Shown in pieces: positions 44,610 through 52,933 of a stretch of 64,000 nt of DNA. A program made the position numbers and the translations under genes. Below the pieces are notes generated by a model, which ran no database searches, was not told the origin of the DNA, and saw nothing but the letters and a program-made list of their open reading frames with translations. Numbering within the stretch: the first letter of the stretch is position 1; each line of letters opens with the position of its first letter. The DNA comes from Octopus sinensis (taxonomy: Eukaryota): positions 34,596,001 through 34,660,000 of the forward strand of contig NC_042997.1 of NCBI RefSeq assembly GCF_006345805.1, given 5' to 3'.

Positions 44610-44856
44610 CTTGGGGTCGAACTGGAGATTCAGCCGGTCTTCTCCTCTAACTCCAGTCTCCCTGAACTACAAAAGATGATCTTGATGGTTACAGCCCATA
44701 TGCTACAGAAAGCACTCTCTATCTAAAATGGAATAAATGGGGGTGATAGTTTTCGCATGCATAGCGAAACAAAAGTGCCCTTGCTACTCTTGGCCTCCGG
44801 AGGGTGCCCGGTACTAAGGCAGCTGAAATAAAGTTATGATGAAAGGAAACCATAAA
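44610..44856 (+). mobile_element. R4/Dong-like extreme 3' end and UTR
   Basis: ELQKMILMVTAHMLQKALSI* parallels the C-termini at 29154 and 52334; ends in (AAT)n. Confidence 0.6.
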
Positions 44857-45050
44857 TAATGATGATAATAATAATAATAATAATAATAATAATAATAATA
44901 ATAATAATAATATTAATAATTACTTAATAATAATAATGATGATGATGATGATGATGATGATGATGATGATGATGATGATGATGATGATGATGATGATGAT
45001 AATAATAATAATAATAATAATAATAATAATAATAATAATAATAATAATAA
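44856..45050. repeat. Compound (AAT)n-(GAT)21-(AAT)n microsatellite
   Basis: The (GAT) run at 44938-45000 is 63 nt. Confidence 0.95.
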
Positions 45051-45649
45051 CAGTAGTAATCTCCGCGCTGAATAACAACATGGATGTATTACACTGGGCT
45101 CCCCATTAAAAAACAAATCTAATCCAATAACATCGATGGACTTAGATAAAGGAACCTGTGGAAGACTTGAAAGAAGCGGTCTTTTAACGAAAATAATGAA
45201 AAAAAAAAATGCAGATTTTTTCCGCCATACAAAGCACAGTTTCTCCTATGCACGATGTCTCAGTGAAACATGTGCGAAACACACGCGATGTCAACACCGG
45301 AAAGTTACAAATTATAAAATAGAAATGGAAGAAAACAATAAGTACATAAATTGAGTAATTACGCATACACTCGAATGTCTATACAATTATATATATATAC
45401 ATTTTAATACCCATAGGACTTTACATACATCTCAATGTTTACACAATTACGTGAAATTTACAGGGCACACATTTACGCATATGAAAACAAGTGTCACAAT
45501 CGAAGCAAAAACAAAAACAAAATTTTATTCTTTTTTTCTCTTTATTTTTTGAACCAACACAGACAGAGTGAACCATTCATAAGTTTAAAAACATCACAAA
45601 AACCTATGCTTGGAGATAAATCTTTCAATACAAAAAACTACAAACGAAT

Positions 45650-48600
45650 ATAGATCTGTTAGCCTTAAGAAGTTACGTTACGAGCCATGTTTACATGCAG
45701 AGAACTCGGTGACGGTGTTGCCTCAAAAAATTGACCCTAAACAGACAAATCCGTCCCCTAATGTCAACGTCGAAGCTTGTCATGCCTCAGTGATAATAAA
45801 GCAAAGTACAAACCAGATTGGTCGTCGACCAGGTCACAAAGCGCTACGTACTCGATATAGATCTGTTAGCCTTAAGAAGTTACGTTACGAGCCATGTTTA
45901 CATGCAGAGAACTCGGTGACGGTGTTGCCTCAAAAAATTGACCCTAAACAGACAAATCCGTCCCCTAATGTCAACGTCGAAGCTTGTCATGCCTCAGTGA
46001 TAATAAAGCAAAGTACAAACCAGATTGGTCGTCGACCAGGTCACAAAGCGCTACGTACTCGATATAGATCTGTTAGCCTTAAGAAGTTACGTTACGAGCC
46101 ATGTTTACATGCAGAGAACTCGGTGACGGTGTTGCCTCAAAAAATTGACCCTAAACAGACAAATCCGTCCCCTAATGTCAACGTCGAAGCTTGTCATGCC
46201 TCAGTGATAATAAAGCAAAGTACAAACCAGATTGGTCGTCGACCAGGTCACAAAGCGCTACGTACTCGATATAGATCTGTTAGCCTTAAGAAGTTACGTT
46301 ACGAGCCATGTTTACATGCAGAGAACTCGGTGACGGTGTTGCCTCAAAAAATTGACCCTAAACAGACAAATCCGTCCCCTAATGTCAACGTCGAAGCTTG
46401 TCATGCCTCAGTGATAATAAAGCAAAGTACAACCAGATTGGTCGTCGACCAGGTCACAAAGCGCTACGTACTCGATATAGATCTGTTAGCCTTAAGAAGT
46501 TACGTTACGAGCCATGTTTACATGCAGAGAACTCGGTGACGGTGTTGCCTCAAAAAATTGACCCTAAACAGACAAATCCGTCCCCTAATGTCAACGTCGA
46601 AGCTTGTCATGCCTCAGTGATAATAAAGCAAAGTACAAACCAGATTGGTCGTCGACCAGGTCACAAAGCGCTACGTACTCGATATAGATCTGTTAGCCTT
46701 AAGAAGTTACGTTACGAGCCATGTTTACATGCAGAGAACTCGGTGACGGTGTTGCCTCAAAAAATTGACCCTAAACAGACAAATCCGTCCCCTAATGTCA
46801 ACGTCGAAGCTTGTCATGCCTCAGTGATAATAAAGCAAAGTACAAACCAGATTGGTCGTCGACCAGGTCACAAAGCGCTACGTACTCGATATAGATCTGT
46901 TAGCCTTAAGAAGTTACGTTACGAGCCATGTTTACATGCAGAGAACTCGGTGACGGTGTTGCCTCAAAAAATTGACCCTAAACAGACAAATCCGTCCCCT
47001 AATGTCAACGTCGAAGCTTGTCATGCCTCAGTGATGATAAAGCAAAGTACAAACCAGATTGGTCGTCGACCAGGTCACAAAGCGCTACGTACTCGATATA
47101 GATCTGTTAGCCTTAAGAAGTTACGTTACGAGCCATGTTTACATGCAGAGAACTCGGTGACGGTGTTGCCTCAAAAAATTGACCCTAAACAGACAAATCC
47201 GTCCCCTAATGTCAACGTCGAAGCTTGTCATGCCTCAGTGATAATAAAGCAAAGTACAAACCAGATTGGTCGTCGACCAGGTCACAAAGCGCTACGTACT
47301 CGATATAGATCTGTTAGCCTTAAGAAGCTACATTGCGAGCCATGTTTACATGCAGAGAACTCGGTGACGGTGTTGCCTCAAAAAATTGACCCTAAACAGA
47401 CAAATCCGTCCCCTAATGTCAACGTCGAAGCTTGTCATGCCTCAGTGATAATAAAGCAAAGTACAAACCAGATTGGTCGTCGACCAGGTCACAAAGCGCT
47501 ACGTACTCGATATAGATCTGTTAGCCTTAAGAAGTTACGTTACGAGCAATGTTTACATGCAGAGAACTCGGTGACGGTTGTTGCCTCAAAAAATTGACCC
47601 TAAACAGACAAATCCGTCCCCTAATGTCAACGTCGAAGCTTTTCATGCCTCAGTGATAATAAAGCAAAGTACAAACCAGATTGGTCGTCGACCAGGTCAC
47701 AAAGCGCTACGTACTCGATATAGATCTGTTAGCCTTAAGAAGTTACGTTACGAGCCATGTTTACATGCAGAGAACTCGGTGACGGTGTTGCCTCAAAAAA
47801 TTGACCCTAAACAGACAAATCCGTCCCCTAATGTCAACGTCGAAGCTTGTCATGCCTCAGTGATAATAAAGCAAAGTACAAACCAGATTGGTCGTCGACC
47901 AGGTCACAAAGCGCTACGTACTCGATATAGATCTGTTAGCCATAAGAAGTTACGTTACGAGCCATGTTTACATGCAGAGAACTCGGTGACGGTGTTGCCT
48001 CAAAAAATTGACCCTAAACAGACAAATCCGTCCCCTAATGTCAACGTCGAAGCTTGTCATGCCTCAGTGATAATAAAGCAAAGTACAAACCAGATTGGTC
48101 GTCGACCAGGTCACAAAGCGCTACGTACTCGATATAGATCTGTTAGCCTTAAGAAGCTACATTGCGAGCCATGTTTACATGCAGAGAACTCGGTGACGGT
48201 GTGTTGCCTCAAAAAATTGACCCTAAACAGACAAATCCGTCCCCTAATGTCAACGTCGAAGCTTGTCATGCCTCAGTGATAATAAAGCAAAGTACAAACC
48301 AGATTGGTCGTCGACCAGGTCACAAAGCGCTACGTACTCGATATAGATCTGTTAGCCTTAAGAAGTTACGTTACGAGCCATGTTTACATGCAGAGAACTC
48401 GGTGACGGTGTTGCCTCAAAAAATTGACCCTAAACAGACAAATCCGTCCCCTAATGTCAACGTCGAAGCTTGTCATGCCTCAGTGATAATAAAGCAAAGT
48501 ACAAACCAGATTGGTCGTCGACCAGGTCACAAAGCGCTACGTACTCGATATAGATCTGTTAGCCTTAAGAAGTTACGTTACGAGCCATGTTTACATGCAG

Positions 48601-50826: not shown

Positions 50827-50829
50827 TGA

Positions 50830-52774
50830 TGAACCAGATTCGATTCGAAAAAATCAGCTACTGGTTCAAATCTTCCCGACGCACAAGAGCTGGAAGTACC
50901 CTACCACCGGAATATTCCAACAGATGGCCATCCATGCTCGCCATTAAATAACCAAAAGACAAAGAATGAAAAATGGTCTAGAGAAGATAATAAAGAAATT
51001 CTTACGGCCTTCTACCATGCCATATATTTCCCCACAGATAAATCTAATACTGTACAAACCTACTTAAACTGGAGACAGAAACACCTTGAAGTAAGACCCT
51101 ACATAAGCAGTAACAAACTTGCCAACGTCAGAAGAAACATTGTAAAAAAAATTACTAACTGAAGTAGAAATTGACCAAATTAAACAAGCAGTAGGGAATA
51201 AATAGAACGAAGCTGCAGCTAAAGAAGATATTACAGAGGAAAAAATAATAGACCAGCCCAGGGATGATGCAAATGCAGTAATGATTAAAAGAGTTAATGT
51301 AAGTGATAGGCAAAGGGAAATACTTCTGAACCAACCATAAACACTAAGGTAGATGAAAATCAAATAGATGAAGAAAATCACACAGAAATTGACCCAACAG
51401 AACTACATGTCCTAAAAAATCAAATGAGTGAATGGCTGAAAATTAAAGAAACCAGTATGAATGAACGCGATACTCTCCCAAAAATTCGGAATTCTAACCA
51501 AAACCTGAAAATAATTGGTAAAATCCGCCTTGCACTTAAGGATATAATTTCACCACCCTAAGGCAGATACAGAACGACTCTATCTGCCAAGAAAAGAGGG
51601 AGGCCTTGGTCTTTTGCAACTGGCAATAACAATGAAGATTGCTACAATTGGCCTAGACACCTACCTGAAAAACTCTGAGGACTGGATGTTAAAACTTGTC
51701 TCAAAACATGAAAACAAGAAAGCATCATACTCAGTCAAAAAACAGGCAAAGGAATATCTAAGTGAATTCCGAATACAACAAATTCCAGAATTAGACGTAC
51801 TAGAAACATGCACAGAAAAAGCTAAGCGCATGAAAATCCGTGTTAAAACTGTTGCCTTAGATATTCTGACTGATAAATGGCAAGAAAAACCTCTCAATGG
51901 CAAATACCCAAAGAGAGCGAATAATGCCAATGGCTAATGGCCTCTGGCTTAAAATCTGACACAGAAGAGTTTATTATAGCAGCCCAAGATCAATGCCTAC
52001 CCACAAGGAACTACCAGGCCAACATATTAAATAATGGCAGTATTCCAACATGTCGTGTATGTCAACAACAAAAGGAAACCATTGATCATGTTGTCTCCAT
52101 GTGCAGTCTTCTAGCACCTACAGAATATCTCAACAGGCATGATAGAGCTACACGATATATTCACTGGGTAATTTGCAAAATCCAGGTGTGCCCCATGATA
52201 AAAACTGGTGGAAACATAAACCACCTCCAGTACTTGAAAATGATCACATCTCACTCCTCTGGGACTTCACCATTCAAACTGACAGAAAGATAGATGCAAA
52301 TAAGCTAGGCAAAAATCATGCCTCCTCATTGATATGACTGTCCAAATCGATATAAACGTATCTGTCAAGACCTACCAAAAACTGAGCAACTATAAAGATC
52401 TTGAAAGAGAAATTTGCAAAATGTGGAACCTGAAGACTAAAACAATACCTGTTGTCATAGGCACCTTAGCAATGATAGCAAAAGGGGTTGATTGCTACCT
52501 AGCTCAAGATACCAGGAATCTCCAAAATGGCAGAAATTCAAAAGATAATGCTCATGGGAACTGTCCATATCCTACGTGAAATACTGTCTATGGAATCTCA
52601 AATTTTAAAACAAACACATAATTTTCTTATGGTTTCTTAAACATTCTCTAGAACAAAACAATGTTCAAAGCCAAATATATGGCATAACACCAAAATGAAC
52701 TTCTAACTTGTTGTCTCTTGAGGTCTCTGTGTAAGACTTGGAGCCAACTTGTACAAATGCGAAGCAAAAGTCAA
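50830..52774 (+). mobile_element. R4/Dong-clade non-LTR element lacking the RT domain
   Basis: The N-terminus KWSREDNKEILTAFYHA...NKLANVRRNI is joined at about 51550 to post-RT HHPKADTERLYLPRKEGGLGLLQL. Then come the Zn knuckle CRVCQQQKETIDHVVSMC..RHD and the RLE LLIDMTVQID...KLSNYKDL...GTAHILR; frameshifts present. Confidence 0.88.
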
Positions 52775-52933
52775 AATAATAATAATAATAATAATAATGA
52801 TGATGATGATGATGATGATGATGATGATGATGATGATGATGATGATGATGATGATGATGATATTAATAATAATAATAATAATAATAATAATAATAATAAT
52901 AATAATAATAATAATGATAATAATAATAATAAT
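52775..52933. repeat. Compound (AAT)n-(GAT)21-(AAT)n microsatellite
   Basis: The (GAT) run at 52799-52861 is 63 nt. Confidence 0.95.

What the first reader, a model, noticed from the sequence alone, without database searches (positions are those of the whole stretch)
44856..52933. Composite element: leader, 207-bp array and RT-less Dong bracketed by matching (GAT)21 compound microsatellites
Seen: about 600 bp of unique leader (45051-45649), the array and a deleted Dong element lie between two (AAT)n-(GAT)21-(AAT)n tracts with identical 63-nt GAT runs. Microsatellite lengths drift quickly, so equal length suggests a recent long target duplication, although the Dong ORF is decayed. Inference: a non-autonomous R4/Dong derivative of about 7.7 kb carrying a satellite as cargo and mobilised in trans. 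That would be a retrotransposon-based route for seeding satellite arrays into microsatellites.
Basis: partly seen in the sequence, partly recalled or inferred. Interest (0 to 1): 0.75.

Follow-up and report, generated by a model that had tools for sequence, protein, structure and literature searches.

The report
Dead Dong retrotransposon with self-amplified 5' repeat
This is one 7.7-kb copy of a microsatellite-targeting Dong/R4-type jumping gene that has lost its reverse transcriptase and has amplified a 207-bp piece of its own front end into 25 tandem copies. The "satellite" is therefore home-made rather than captured cargo, which is interesting but belongs to a known kind of event.

Summary
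Two exact (GAT)21 runs (44938-45000 and 52799-52861) are the only GAT runs of 5 or more units in the window. They bracket a 590-bp leader, a 25-unit 207-bp array and an RT-less Dong-like remnant.

Three related copies on public short-read contigs (L007, L008, L009) carry the same leader followed by one unit and then the ORF. The leader is therefore the element's 5'UTR, and its 5' end is at 45061, directly after a trinucleotide microsatellite, as in L008.

The array is not foreign cargo. The last ~70 nt of each unit encode the conserved N-terminal motif of Dong-like ORFs. Unit 25 is 15.5% diverged and runs straight into the ORF. The single-unit state is ancestral.

The AAT tracts at both ends fit the known (TAA)n targeting of Dong elements. 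The duplicated (GAT)21 block is best read as a 63-75-bp target-site duplication made by nicks in the AAT tracts on either side of it.

Because the RT deletion, the frame breaks and the first unit duplication look far older than two identical 21-unit microsatellites, the copy was probably inserted already dead and already repeat-bearing. That implies mobilisation in trans.

No second copy, empty site or read-level check of the GAT lengths was reachable, so mobilisation is inferred, not shown.

The parts
44856..44937 (+). Left compound microsatellite, upstream AAT-rich part: (AAT)15, ATT AAT AAT TAC TT, then (AAT)4
   Evidence: Read as part of the original (TAA)n-type target.
44938..45000 (+). 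Left (GAT)21 run, 63 nt, perfect
   Evidence: Identical in length and register to 52799-52861. Proposed left copy of the target-site duplication.
45001..45060 (+). (AAT)16 plus AACAGTAGTAAT, lying between the left GAT block and the element's 5' end
   Evidence: It differs from the tract right of the second GAT block at the first unit (AAT versus ATT) and at units 17-19, so it is probably not part of the duplication. Its origin (co-transcribed donor microsatellite or junction filler) is inferred only.
45061..45647 (+). Leader: the unique part of the element's 5'UTR, with the element's 5' end at 45061 (CTCCGCGCTGAATAAC...)
   Evidence: L008 28-765 matches window 45061-45822 at 67.5% identity, E 3e-72, and the match starts right after a (GAT)3(GAC)6 tract in L008. 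L009 15-378 matches 45393-45757 at 74%, E 7e-63. L007 65-253 matches 45634-45822 at 83%.
45648..50617 (+). Units 1-24 of the 207-bp array, homogeneous. Each unit is about 136 nt of 5'UTR plus about 70 nt of ORF start.
   Evidence: Thirteen units are identical. Shared variants recur in units 7/19, 9/13/20/24 and 13/23. One frame stays open through every unit.
50618..50825 (+). Unit 25, the diverged edge unit that runs directly into the ORF
   Evidence: 32 substitutions and 0 indels against the consensus. L007 and L009 align collinearly from their single unit, which corresponds to unit 25, on into the tether and ORF.
50769..51552 (+). N-terminal ORF remnant. The conserved start motif (TNRNGHRPDHKGPRTRMMNQIRFEK / KSATGSN) straddles the unit 25/tether border, and an ATGATG lies at 50826-50831. 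At least 3 frame changes and several stops.
   Evidence: tblastn of P0114. DNA match to L002 across 50773-50877. N-terminal alignment of 9 or more families. P0236 is 55% identical, E 1e-33. phmmer gave 108 relatives.
51548..51556 (+). Internal deletion junction (51552/51553) that removes about 590 aa, including the whole RT domain
   Evidence: The L003 reference ORFs show the N-terminal part ending near residue 244 and the RT ORF resuming at residue 373. L007 continues past window 51552 into undeleted sequence.
51553..52592 (+). C-terminal ORF remnant: thumb region (RLYLPRKEGGLGL), CCHC zinc knuckle at 52051-52104, and the restriction-like endonuclease region with the RPD motif deleted near 52290-52340. 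Four frame changes.
   Evidence: E 1e-115, 51% identity to P0001; 66% to an Octopus bimaculoides protein, P0039. (zf-RVT).
52593..52774 (+). 3'UTR of the element
   Evidence: Homology to relatives' C-termini ends at 52592. Unique sequence continues up to the AAT tail.
52775..52798 (+). (AAT)8: element tail and/or priming site
   Evidence: Related elements also end in (AAT)n (L003, L006).
52799..52861 (+). Right (GAT)21 run, 63 nt, perfect
   Evidence: Proposed right copy of the target-site duplication.
52862..52933 (+). ATT (AAT)17 GAT (AAT)5: the downstream remainder of the target microsatellite

Best explanation
The block 45061-52774 is a single, 5'-complete copy of a Dong/R4-type non-LTR retrotransposon. 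This is the kind that carries a C-terminal restriction-like endonuclease and targets (TAA)n microsatellites.

The copy is defective. An internal deletion removed the reverse transcriptase, the endonuclease PD motif is lost, and the remaining reading frame is broken at least seven times.

Its 207-bp 'satellite' is not foreign. Each unit is the last ~136 nt of the element's 5'UTR plus the first ~70 nt of its ORF. Relatives carry this segment once. Here it was duplicated long ago, since unit 25 is 15.5% diverged from the rest. One variant was then amplified recently to 24 near-identical units, probably by unequal exchange of one or more units.

The element sits in a compound (AAT)n-(GAT)21-(AAT)n microsatellite. 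The most likely history is target-primed reverse transcription. The bottom strand was nicked in the AAT tract left of the GAT block. The top strand was nicked at the AAT tract right of it. The 63-75 bp between the nicks, containing (GAT)21, was thereby duplicated.

Two pure 21-unit microsatellites are still identical, whereas the deletion, the frame breaks and the first unit duplication are old. The inserted RNA was therefore probably already RT-less and already carried at least two units, which means it was copied by the protein of an autonomous Dong element.

Shown: the identity of the parts, the origin of the array, the membership of the leader, and the ancestral single-unit state. Inferred: the target-site duplication, the timing, and mobilisation in trans.
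For: Identity of the element:
- The C-terminal remnant matches proteins with RVT_1 domains at E 1e-115.
- A CCHC knuckle and the endonuclease region are present.
- The RT gap was mapped against L003 and L007.

The array is self-derived:
- P0114 residues 6-33 align to 50769-50852 and residues 32-244 to 50848-51546, collinearly.
- L002 DNA aligns across the unit 25/tether border, E 6e-5.
- The motif [ST]YRIGRRAGKQGPRPSVGNQAEVEKSATGTNS lies 6-12 residues after the start Met in nine or more families. It is matched by unit 25 and by the array consensus.
- P0236 aligns to unit 25 plus tether at E 1e-33 and to the consensus unit at E 3e-11.

The leader is part of the element and the single unit is ancestral:
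- L008, L009 and L007 each show leader, one unit, then ORF.
- L008's homology begins right after a trinucleotide microsatellite.

Old first duplication, recent amplification:
- There are 32 differences between the consensus and unit 25. The outgroup L007 sides with the consensus at 17 of them and with unit 25 at 11.
- Thirteen of 25 units are identical.

Targeting of (AAT)n:
- Literature: PMC3812793.
- A second truncated copy at 29135-29534 lies between (AAT)14 and (AAT)8.
- Related elements in L002, L004, L005 and L006 abut (AAT)n directly.

Duplication of (GAT)21.

Precedents (title and abstract only; neither paper was read):
- A very long target-site duplication by a related endonuclease-type element: Gladyshev and Arkhipova 2009, reference seen.
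- Internally deleted non-autonomous derivatives: R2 SIDEs, PMC3414825.
Against: No second copy of this RT-less, array-bearing form was found. Exact look-ups of two of its ORFs were negative, and none of 106 related representative proteins contains two units. Mobilisation of this form therefore rests on one locus.

The equality of the two GAT runs comes from an assembly that has a gap (9699-9798) and scattered 1-2-bp indels in the array. Read-level support could not be checked. Polishing with multi-mapping short reads could make the two runs equal.

The 60 nt between the left GAT block and the element, (AAT)16 AACAGTAGTAAT, has no firm explanation.

A 63-75-bp duplication has not, to my knowledge, been described for Dong elements.

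The source species was not identified. The closest named relative is an Octopus bimaculoides protein at 66% identity.
Confidence: 0.6

Rival explanations
1. Old insertion that evolved in place. A Dong copy inserted long ago into an (AAT)n tract and decayed there, losing RT and acquiring frame breaks. It duplicated its 5' segment and later amplified it locally. The two (GAT)21 runs are equal because of gene conversion between the flanking microsatellites, parallel expansion, or assembly polishing, not because of a recent duplication.
For: Everything except the GAT equality is explained without any mobilisation of a dead element. Only single-unit relatives were found. The assembly shows a gap and small indels that suggest imperfect consensus. 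The AAT tracts next to the two GAT blocks are not identical.
Against: Two perfect 63-nt runs in the same register, which are the only such runs in 64 kb, are hard to obtain independently. Gene conversion that equalised the GAT blocks would also be expected to equalise the adjoining AAT tracts, and these differ.
Confidence: 0.27
2. DNA-level insertion or duplication. The 7.7-kb block moved or was duplicated as DNA, for example by microsatellite-mediated recombination, reintegration of a circular DNA, or replication-based template switching, and this duplicated the compound microsatellite.
For: A dead element needs no helper protein under this model. Long direct microsatellite repeats are good recombination substrates. 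This is inference; no tool result points to it specifically.
Against: The block's ends coincide exactly with a complete element. The 5' end matches that of L008, and the 3' end is a 3'UTR followed by an AAT tail. That is expected for retrotransposition and would be a coincidence for a DNA rearrangement. Simple single-crossover models give only one GAT block.
Confidence: 0.08
3. A pre-existing 207-bp satellite was captured as cargo by a non-autonomous Dong derivative, which then spreads it.
For: The array is long (5.2 kb), homogeneous and lies inside a retrotransposon copy.
Against: The unit contains the element's own conserved ORF start and 5'UTR. Three related copies hold it once, between the same leader and the same ORF. 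Array-type proteins were not found in the protein collection, although that search also missed P0236 and P0169, so it is weak negative evidence.
Confidence: 0.03

Closest known systems
Dong (R4 clade) non-LTR retrotransposons that target (TAA)n microsatellites (Xiong and Eickbush 1993; Kojima and Fujiwara 2004, as summarised in PMC3812793)
   Same: There is a single ORF with a C-terminal CCHC knuckle and a restriction-like endonuclease region. (AAT)n lies at both junctions, and the element has an AAT tail. A second truncated copy in the window and four related loci show the same targeting.
   Different: This copy has no RT, has a dead endonuclease, and carries a 590-nt leader and a 5.2-kb internal array. 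The flanking duplication includes a (GAT)21 block. RT-based clade placement could not be done.
Mouse L1 5'UTR monomers, about 200-bp tandem promoter units followed by a tether (PMC9022269)
   Same: Tandem repeats of about 200 bp made from the LINE's own 5' region, lying upstream of the ORF, with a diverged last unit or non-repeated link to the ORF.
   Different: L1 monomers are a family-wide feature at the very 5' end and have proven promoter activity. Here the repeats lie downstream of a 590-nt unique leader, include the ORF start, number 25, and were seen in one copy only, while relatives have one unit. Promoter activity is untested.
SIDEs: short internally deleted non-autonomous derivatives of R2 and CR1 elements (PMC3414825, PMC6740152)
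   Same: An internal deletion removes the enzymatic core while both ends are kept, so mobility would depend on a full-length partner's protein.
   Different: SIDEs are short and are defined as multi-copy families that share one deletion. This element is 7.7 kb, and no second copy with the 51552/51553 junction was found.
Transposon-derived satellite arrays, and satellite-like repeats carried by mobile elements (reviews PMC9659126, PMC6947457; oyster Helentrons, PMC7492417)
   Same: A tandem array whose monomer is a piece of a transposable element and which lies inside a mobile-element copy.
   Different: The listed LINE cases derive from 3'UTR or ORF2 segments. A 5'UTR/ORF-start unit of a Dong-type element was not found in the literature searched. 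Spread to other loci is not shown.
[quoted passage not shown]
   Same: An endonuclease-type LINE whose two strand cuts lie far apart, giving a duplication of tens to more than a hundred base pairs.
   Different: A different clade and a different target (28S rDNA). Here the duplication is inferred from one insertion.

Membership tests
Dong / R4-clade LINE | Single ORF with RT followed by a CCHC motif and a PD-(D/E)XK restriction-like endonuclease | tested here: inconclusive
   The C-terminal 350 aa are homologous (E 1e-115) to proteins that carry RVT_1 upstream of the same domains. CCHC lies at 52051-52104. The RT is deleted and the RPD motif is missing in this copy. Ancestry is clear, but the copy itself lacks the defining enzyme.
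Dong / R4-clade LINE | Insertion into (TAA)n microsatellites, with a TAA-type tail | tested here: met
   AAT tracts at both junctions. The same is seen for the second copy at 29135-29534 and for related elements in L002, L004, L005, L006 and L003. Literature.
Dong / R4-clade LINE | Placement inside the R4 clade in an RT phylogeny | not testable with these tools
   The RT domain is absent from this copy. No reference set of classified RTs was available, and relatives' RTs were not placed.
Non-autonomous internally deleted LINE (SIDE-like) | Internal deletion with both termini retained | tested here: met
   The 5' end matches that of L008. The 3'UTR and tail are present. The deletion of about 590 aa is at 51552/51553.
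Non-autonomous internally deleted LINE (SIDE-like) | Several copies at different loci that share the same deletion, as proof of mobilisation | tested here: inconclusive
   An exact look-up of the 45-aa ORF spanning the junction found nothing, and there is no other copy in the window. The source genome is apparently not in the searchable collections, so absence is uninformative.
Satellite DNA | Long homogeneous head-to-tail array of one monomer | tested here: met
   25 units of 207 bp, 5.2 kb in total, 98% matches.
Satellite DNA | Many arrays or high genomic copy number | not testable with these tools
   There is only one array in the window. A monomer 26-mer was absent from JGI metagenome contigs. 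No array-type ORF was found in the protein collection (weak negative).
L1-type promoter monomers | Tandem 5' units present in the full-length members of the family | tested here: not met
   Three related copies (L007, L008, L009) have a single unit. None of 106 related proteins holds two units.
L1-type promoter monomers | Each unit drives transcription | not testable with these tools
   No expression data or eukaryotic promoter assay was available. The unit RNA is not unusually structured (z +1.46) and has no Rfam match.
Ribozyme-bearing tandem retroelements (retrozymes) or HDV-like 5' ribozymes of R2-type LINEs | Hammerhead or HDV-like ribozyme in the unit or at the 5' end | tested here: not met
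   No ribozyme family matched at E of 0.1 or better in 40000-58000.

The most novel reading that the evidence does not exclude
The RT-less, array-bearing Dong derivative is a living non-autonomous family. Autonomous Dong-R4 elements copy it in trans, each new insertion plants a ready-made 207-bp array next to an (AAT)n microsatellite, and the multimerised 5'UTR/ORF-start units give it a transcriptional or template advantage. The long (GAT)21 duplication would then reveal that the Dong endonuclease can cut the two strands at separate AAT tracts tens of base pairs apart.
Probability: 0.15. Interest if true: 0.65.

Novelty: new variant of a known kind. Interest (0 to 1): 0.4.

Why it matters
The locus catches a tandem array at an early, readable stage. 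The monomer can still be traced base by base to the 5'UTR and start codon region of a specific retrotransposon. The single-unit ancestor is seen in relatives, and one old edge unit records the first duplication.

If the (GAT)21 pair is a true target-site duplication, two further points follow. A dead, 7.7-kb, repeat-laden LINE can still be copied by its relatives. And a (TAA)n-specific endonuclease can place its two nicks in different AAT tracts, which would explain very long duplications in compound microsatellites.

The case also carries a practical warning for annotation. Arrays like this would be labelled 'satellite' next to a 'Dong fragment' when they are one element.

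Tried and rejected
- **Exact-protein look-ups of window ORFs.** The 118-aa ORF and the 45-aa ORF across the deletion junction returned nothing. The source genome seems not to be indexed.
- **Octopus protein P0039.** It is not on record as a contig.
- **Word-indexed protein search with two units, unit 25 and the N-terminus.** It found only P0114. It missed closer relatives that the exhaustive phmmer later found, so its negative result on array ORFs is weak.
- **Scans of JGI metagenome contigs.** A monomer 26-mer and a conserved leader 22-mer both gave zero matches.
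- **Rfam scans** of the region and of four related loci found no ribozyme or other RNA family.
- **Folding the unit RNA** gave no excess structure.
- **Coding test on the open frame of the unit.** There is no sign of purifying selection (2 synonymous versus 26 non-synonymous codon changes). An open frame arises in about 10% of shuffles. I therefore do not claim that the array encodes a repeat protein.
- **Similarity of the leader or the 5'UTR part of the unit to cnidarian Dong 5'UTRs.** None was found.
- **Leader end as a degenerate older unit.** There is only a marginal hint (6 of 300 shuffles), so it is not used.
- **Upstream flank 44600-44855 as another AAT-tailed element related to 29559-29909.** No similarity beyond the microsatellite.
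- **'Tail-only upstream copy' idea.** Considered and set aside, because no 3'UTR sequence precedes the left microsatellite.
- **Species of the SRR118693xx runs.** It could not be established from the literature.

Full report
**1. What is there**

Perfect (GAT)21 runs lie at 44938-45000 and 52799-52861. They are the only GAT or ATC runs of five or more units in the 64-kb window.

Both runs are embedded, in the same register, in AAT tracts:
- Left: (AAT)15 ATT AAT AAT TAC TT (AAT)4 (GAT)21 (AAT)16 AACAGTAGTAAT.
- Right: (AAT)8 (GAT)21 ATT (AAT)17 GAT (AAT)5.

Tandem Repeats Finder gives a 207-bp array at 45648-50825 with 25.0 copies and 98% matches. When the array is split into units, 13 are identical. 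Units 1-24 differ from the consensus at 0-5 positions, including six small indels. Unit 25 (50618-50824) has 32 substitutions and no indel, which is 15.5% divergence. The window has one assembly gap, at 9699-9798.

**2. The retrotransposon remnant**

A frame-corrected translation of 51553-52592 matches 113 proteins. The best match is at E 1e-115 and 51% identity. Several of the matches carry the RVT_1 domain just upstream of the matched part, and an Octopus bimaculoides protein matches at 66%.

The remnant holds three recognisable features:
- the thumb motif RLYLPRKEGGLGL;
- a CX2CX8HX4C knuckle at 52051-52104;
- the endonuclease region, in which the RPD motif seen in relatives is missing near 52290-52340.

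L003 is a nearly full-length related element. Mapped against it, the N-terminal part of the window copy ends near residue 244 and the sequence resumes at residue 373 of the RT ORF. About 590 aa, including the whole RT, are therefore gone. A closer relative, L007, runs past window position 51552 into undeleted sequence, which places the junction at 51552/51553.

There are at least three frame changes in the N-terminal part and four in the C-terminal part. The label 'RT-less Dong' is justified, with one caveat. Placement in the R4 clade rests on domain order and target choice, not on an RT tree.

**3. Why AAT on both sides**

Dong elements are reported to target (TAA)n microsatellites (PMC3812793). 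The window contains its own control. A second, 5'-truncated Dong-like copy of a different subfamily lies at 29135-29534, between (AAT)14(AAG)5 and (AAT)8.

Related elements on public contigs behave the same way:
- They start directly after (ATA)35 in L002, (AAT)5 in L004, (AAT)8 in L005 and (TAA)10 in L006.
- They end in AAT repeats.
- In L004 and L005 they stand head to tail.

The AAT tracts therefore need no special explanation. Only the duplicated GAT block does.

**4. The array is made from the element itself**

The first clue was P0114, the N-terminus of a related element. Its residues 6-33 align to window 50769-50852, which is the end of unit 25 plus the first bases after the array. Its residues 32-244 align to 50848-51546, collinearly, with one frame shift. 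At the DNA level, L002 aligns across the same border (50773-50877) at 69% identity, E 6e-5.

Nine or more related families share the motif [ST]YRIGRRAGKQGPRPSVGNQAEVEKSATGTNS, which begins 6-12 residues after their start Met. Unit 25 reads TTNRNGHRPDHKGPRTRMMNQIRFEK/KSATGSN. The array consensus reads STNQIGRRPGHKALRTR before it jumps back to the start of the next unit.

An exhaustive phmmer search with window 50848-51159 then found closer relatives. P0236 aligns to unit 25 plus tether at 55% identity, E 1e-33, and to the consensus unit at E 3e-11.

Each 207-bp unit is therefore about 136 nt of 5'UTR plus about 70 nt of ORF start. The unit is open in the ORF's frame. However, unit 25 and the consensus differ by 26 non-synonymous and 2 synonymous codon changes, and about 10% of shuffled units have an open frame. 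I do not infer a functional repeat protein.

**5. The leader belongs to the element, and one unit is the ancestral state**

Three short-read contigs carrying those closer relatives could be fetched.
- L008 begins in a (GAT)3(GAC)6 tract. From its base 28 on, it is homologous to window 45061-45822, which is the whole leader and most of a unit (67.5% identity, E 3e-72). It then runs, after that single unit, into the tether and the ORF (L008 603-1353 matches 50625-51454, E 1e-72).
- L009 shows the distal leader (15-378 matches 45393-45757, 74%), one internally shortened unit, the ATGATGAACC that follows unit 25 in the window, and the ORF.
- L007 shows the leader end, one unit (83-84% identical to array units) and the ORF.

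The three contigs are only 65-70% identical to each other, so they represent separate subfamilies or old copies. Three conclusions follow:
- The leader is the unique part of the 5'UTR, not locus-specific flank.
- The element's 5' end is at 45061, directly after a trinucleotide microsatellite, as in L008.
- The array has exactly 25.0 units because it arose by duplication of an internal segment (A-B-C became A-Bn-C), not by truncation of a longer array.

None of 106 related representative proteins contains two units. The array is therefore a derived state of this copy or its close kin.

**6. Order of events**

At the 32 sites where unit 25 and the consensus differ, the outgroup L007 agrees with the consensus 17 times, with unit 25 11 times and with neither 4 times. 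Both lineages have therefore changed since the first duplication, which must be old.

Units 1-24 are nearly identical, so their amplification is recent. Shared variants point to unequal exchange or conversion among units rather than a strict higher-order repeat:
- 148G occurs in units 7 and 19.
- A three-site haplotype occurs in units 9, 13, 20 and 24, and also in unit 25.
- A GT insertion occurs in units 13 and 23.

From general knowledge, long pure trinucleotide runs change length orders of magnitude faster than single bases are substituted. Two identical (GAT)21 runs therefore imply a very recent duplication, if the assembly is right. On that reading, the event that duplicated the GAT block is younger than the RT deletion, the frame breaks and the first unit duplication.

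**7. Most likely mechanism**

The simplest model is one retrotransposition event into a target of the form ...(AAT)4 (GAT)21 ATT (AAT)17....
- The bottom strand was nicked in the AAT tract left of the GAT block. Its end primed reverse transcription on the RNA's AAU tail, and the (AAT)8 at 52775-52798 is the result.
- The top strand was cut at the start of the AAT tract right of the block.
- The 63-75 bp between the nicks was duplicated.

The duplication probably does not extend further right. The tracts following the two GAT blocks differ at the first unit (AAT versus ATT) and at units 17-19.

An endonuclease that recognises AAT repeats and meets two AAT tracts separated by 63 bp would account for the unusual length. 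A related endonuclease-type element is reported to make an exceptionally long duplication (reference seen; the paper was not read). The (AAT)16 AACAGTAGTAAT between the left GAT block and the element remains unexplained. A co-transcribed donor microsatellite or junction filling are possibilities.

If the model holds, the template RNA was already RT-less and had at least two units, so it was copied by another element's protein. This would be analogous to R2 SIDEs (PMC3414825). If the source is an octopus, which is not established, candidate helpers exist. Octopus vulgaris is reported to hold five recently active Dong-R4 families with 1,129 insertions (PMC13282606).

**8. Rivals and limits**

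The main rival is an old insertion that decayed and amplified in place, with the GAT equality produced by conversion or by assembly polishing. It cannot be excluded without reads, other individuals or sister species. The AAT tracts beside the GAT blocks differ, which argues against conversion but not against polishing artefacts.

A DNA-level move is less likely, because the block's ends are exactly a complete element's ends. The 'captured satellite' reading is contradicted by sections 4 and 5.

No second RT-less or array-bearing copy was found. The source genome appears not to be in the searchable collections, so this absence carries little weight.

**9. Comparison with what is known**

In function the array resembles mouse L1 5' monomers (PMC9022269) and transposon-derived satellites (PMC9659126; PMC7492417). 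The deletion derivative resembles SIDEs. It differs from these in several ways:
- The repeats lie behind a 590-nt unique leader.
- They include the ORF start.
- They were seen in one copy only.

In the library searched, no paper links Dong-R4 elements to satellite formation.

I rate the finding a new variant of a known kind and of moderate interest. It is a clean, datable example rather than a new principle.

Noticed in passing
window 29093-29558: A second, 5'-truncated Dong-like copy of a different subfamily (71% DNA identity to the main copy over 96 nt). It spans 29135-29534, encodes only the last ~95 aa and a 3'UTR, and lies between (AAT)14(AAG)5A7 and (AAT)8. A further (AAT)11 follows at 29910-29942.
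   Followed up: partly
L008 1-27: In this related copy the element's 5' end is preceded by (GAT)3(GAC)6 rather than AAT repeats. GAT-type trinucleotide tracts may therefore be a recurrent neighbour or target of this subfamily. The contig ends inside the tract.
   Followed up: no
L002 2717-2937; L004 7716-8000; L005 7528-8000; L006 7776-8000: Related Dong-like elements from other ENA contigs (host organisms unknown; one homologue, P0144, is from the coral Porites lobata) share a conserved block in the 5'UTR just upstream of the ATG. It has a helix (TAGTTGGG...CCCAACTA) that keeps pairing through compensatory changes. No Rfam family matches. The L005 5'UTR also holds a two-copy internal duplication of about 65 nt.
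   Followed up: partly
L004 1-11900; L005 1-11900: Dong-like elements stand head to tail and share short (AAT)n junctions, as expected if new copies insert into the tails of older ones.
   Followed up: partly
window 45610-50951: One reading frame is open through every 207-bp unit (69 codons per unit) and is interrupted only where units have 1-2-bp indels. It is the same frame as the ORF start, but there is no sign of selection on it.
   Followed up: yes
window 46269-50618: Six of the 24 homogeneous units carry 1-2-bp indels, some in short base runs. These may be consensus errors of a long-read assembly rather than real variants, which is relevant to how far the microsatellite lengths can be trusted.
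   Followed up: no
window 42625-42700 and 43420-43790: By eye, there is a tRNA-like SINE head (GGTTCGATTCCC-type box). Downstream lies the C-terminal end of a CR1/L2-like LINE ORF (…RLKTLDLYSLEKRR…-like translation).
   Followed up: no
window 38734-39222 (-): A 162-aa ORF that looks like the apurinic-type endonuclease domain of another LINE family.
   Followed up: no
window 6341-6960; 25127-25512 versus 37447-37831; 14161-14568 versus 41673-42064 and 55973-56135: Long inverted repeats. One is a 258-nt hairpin with 97% complementary arms and a 104-nt loop. There are also several dispersed repeat pairs at 94-98%, presumably other mobile elements.
   Followed up: no
window 230-480, 2916-3330, 3850-4260, 56780-57900: Very dense (AC)n, (ACAT)n and (AT)n microsatellites. 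Weak 'miRNA' Rfam hits at 57760-57930 are low-complexity artefacts.
   Followed up: no
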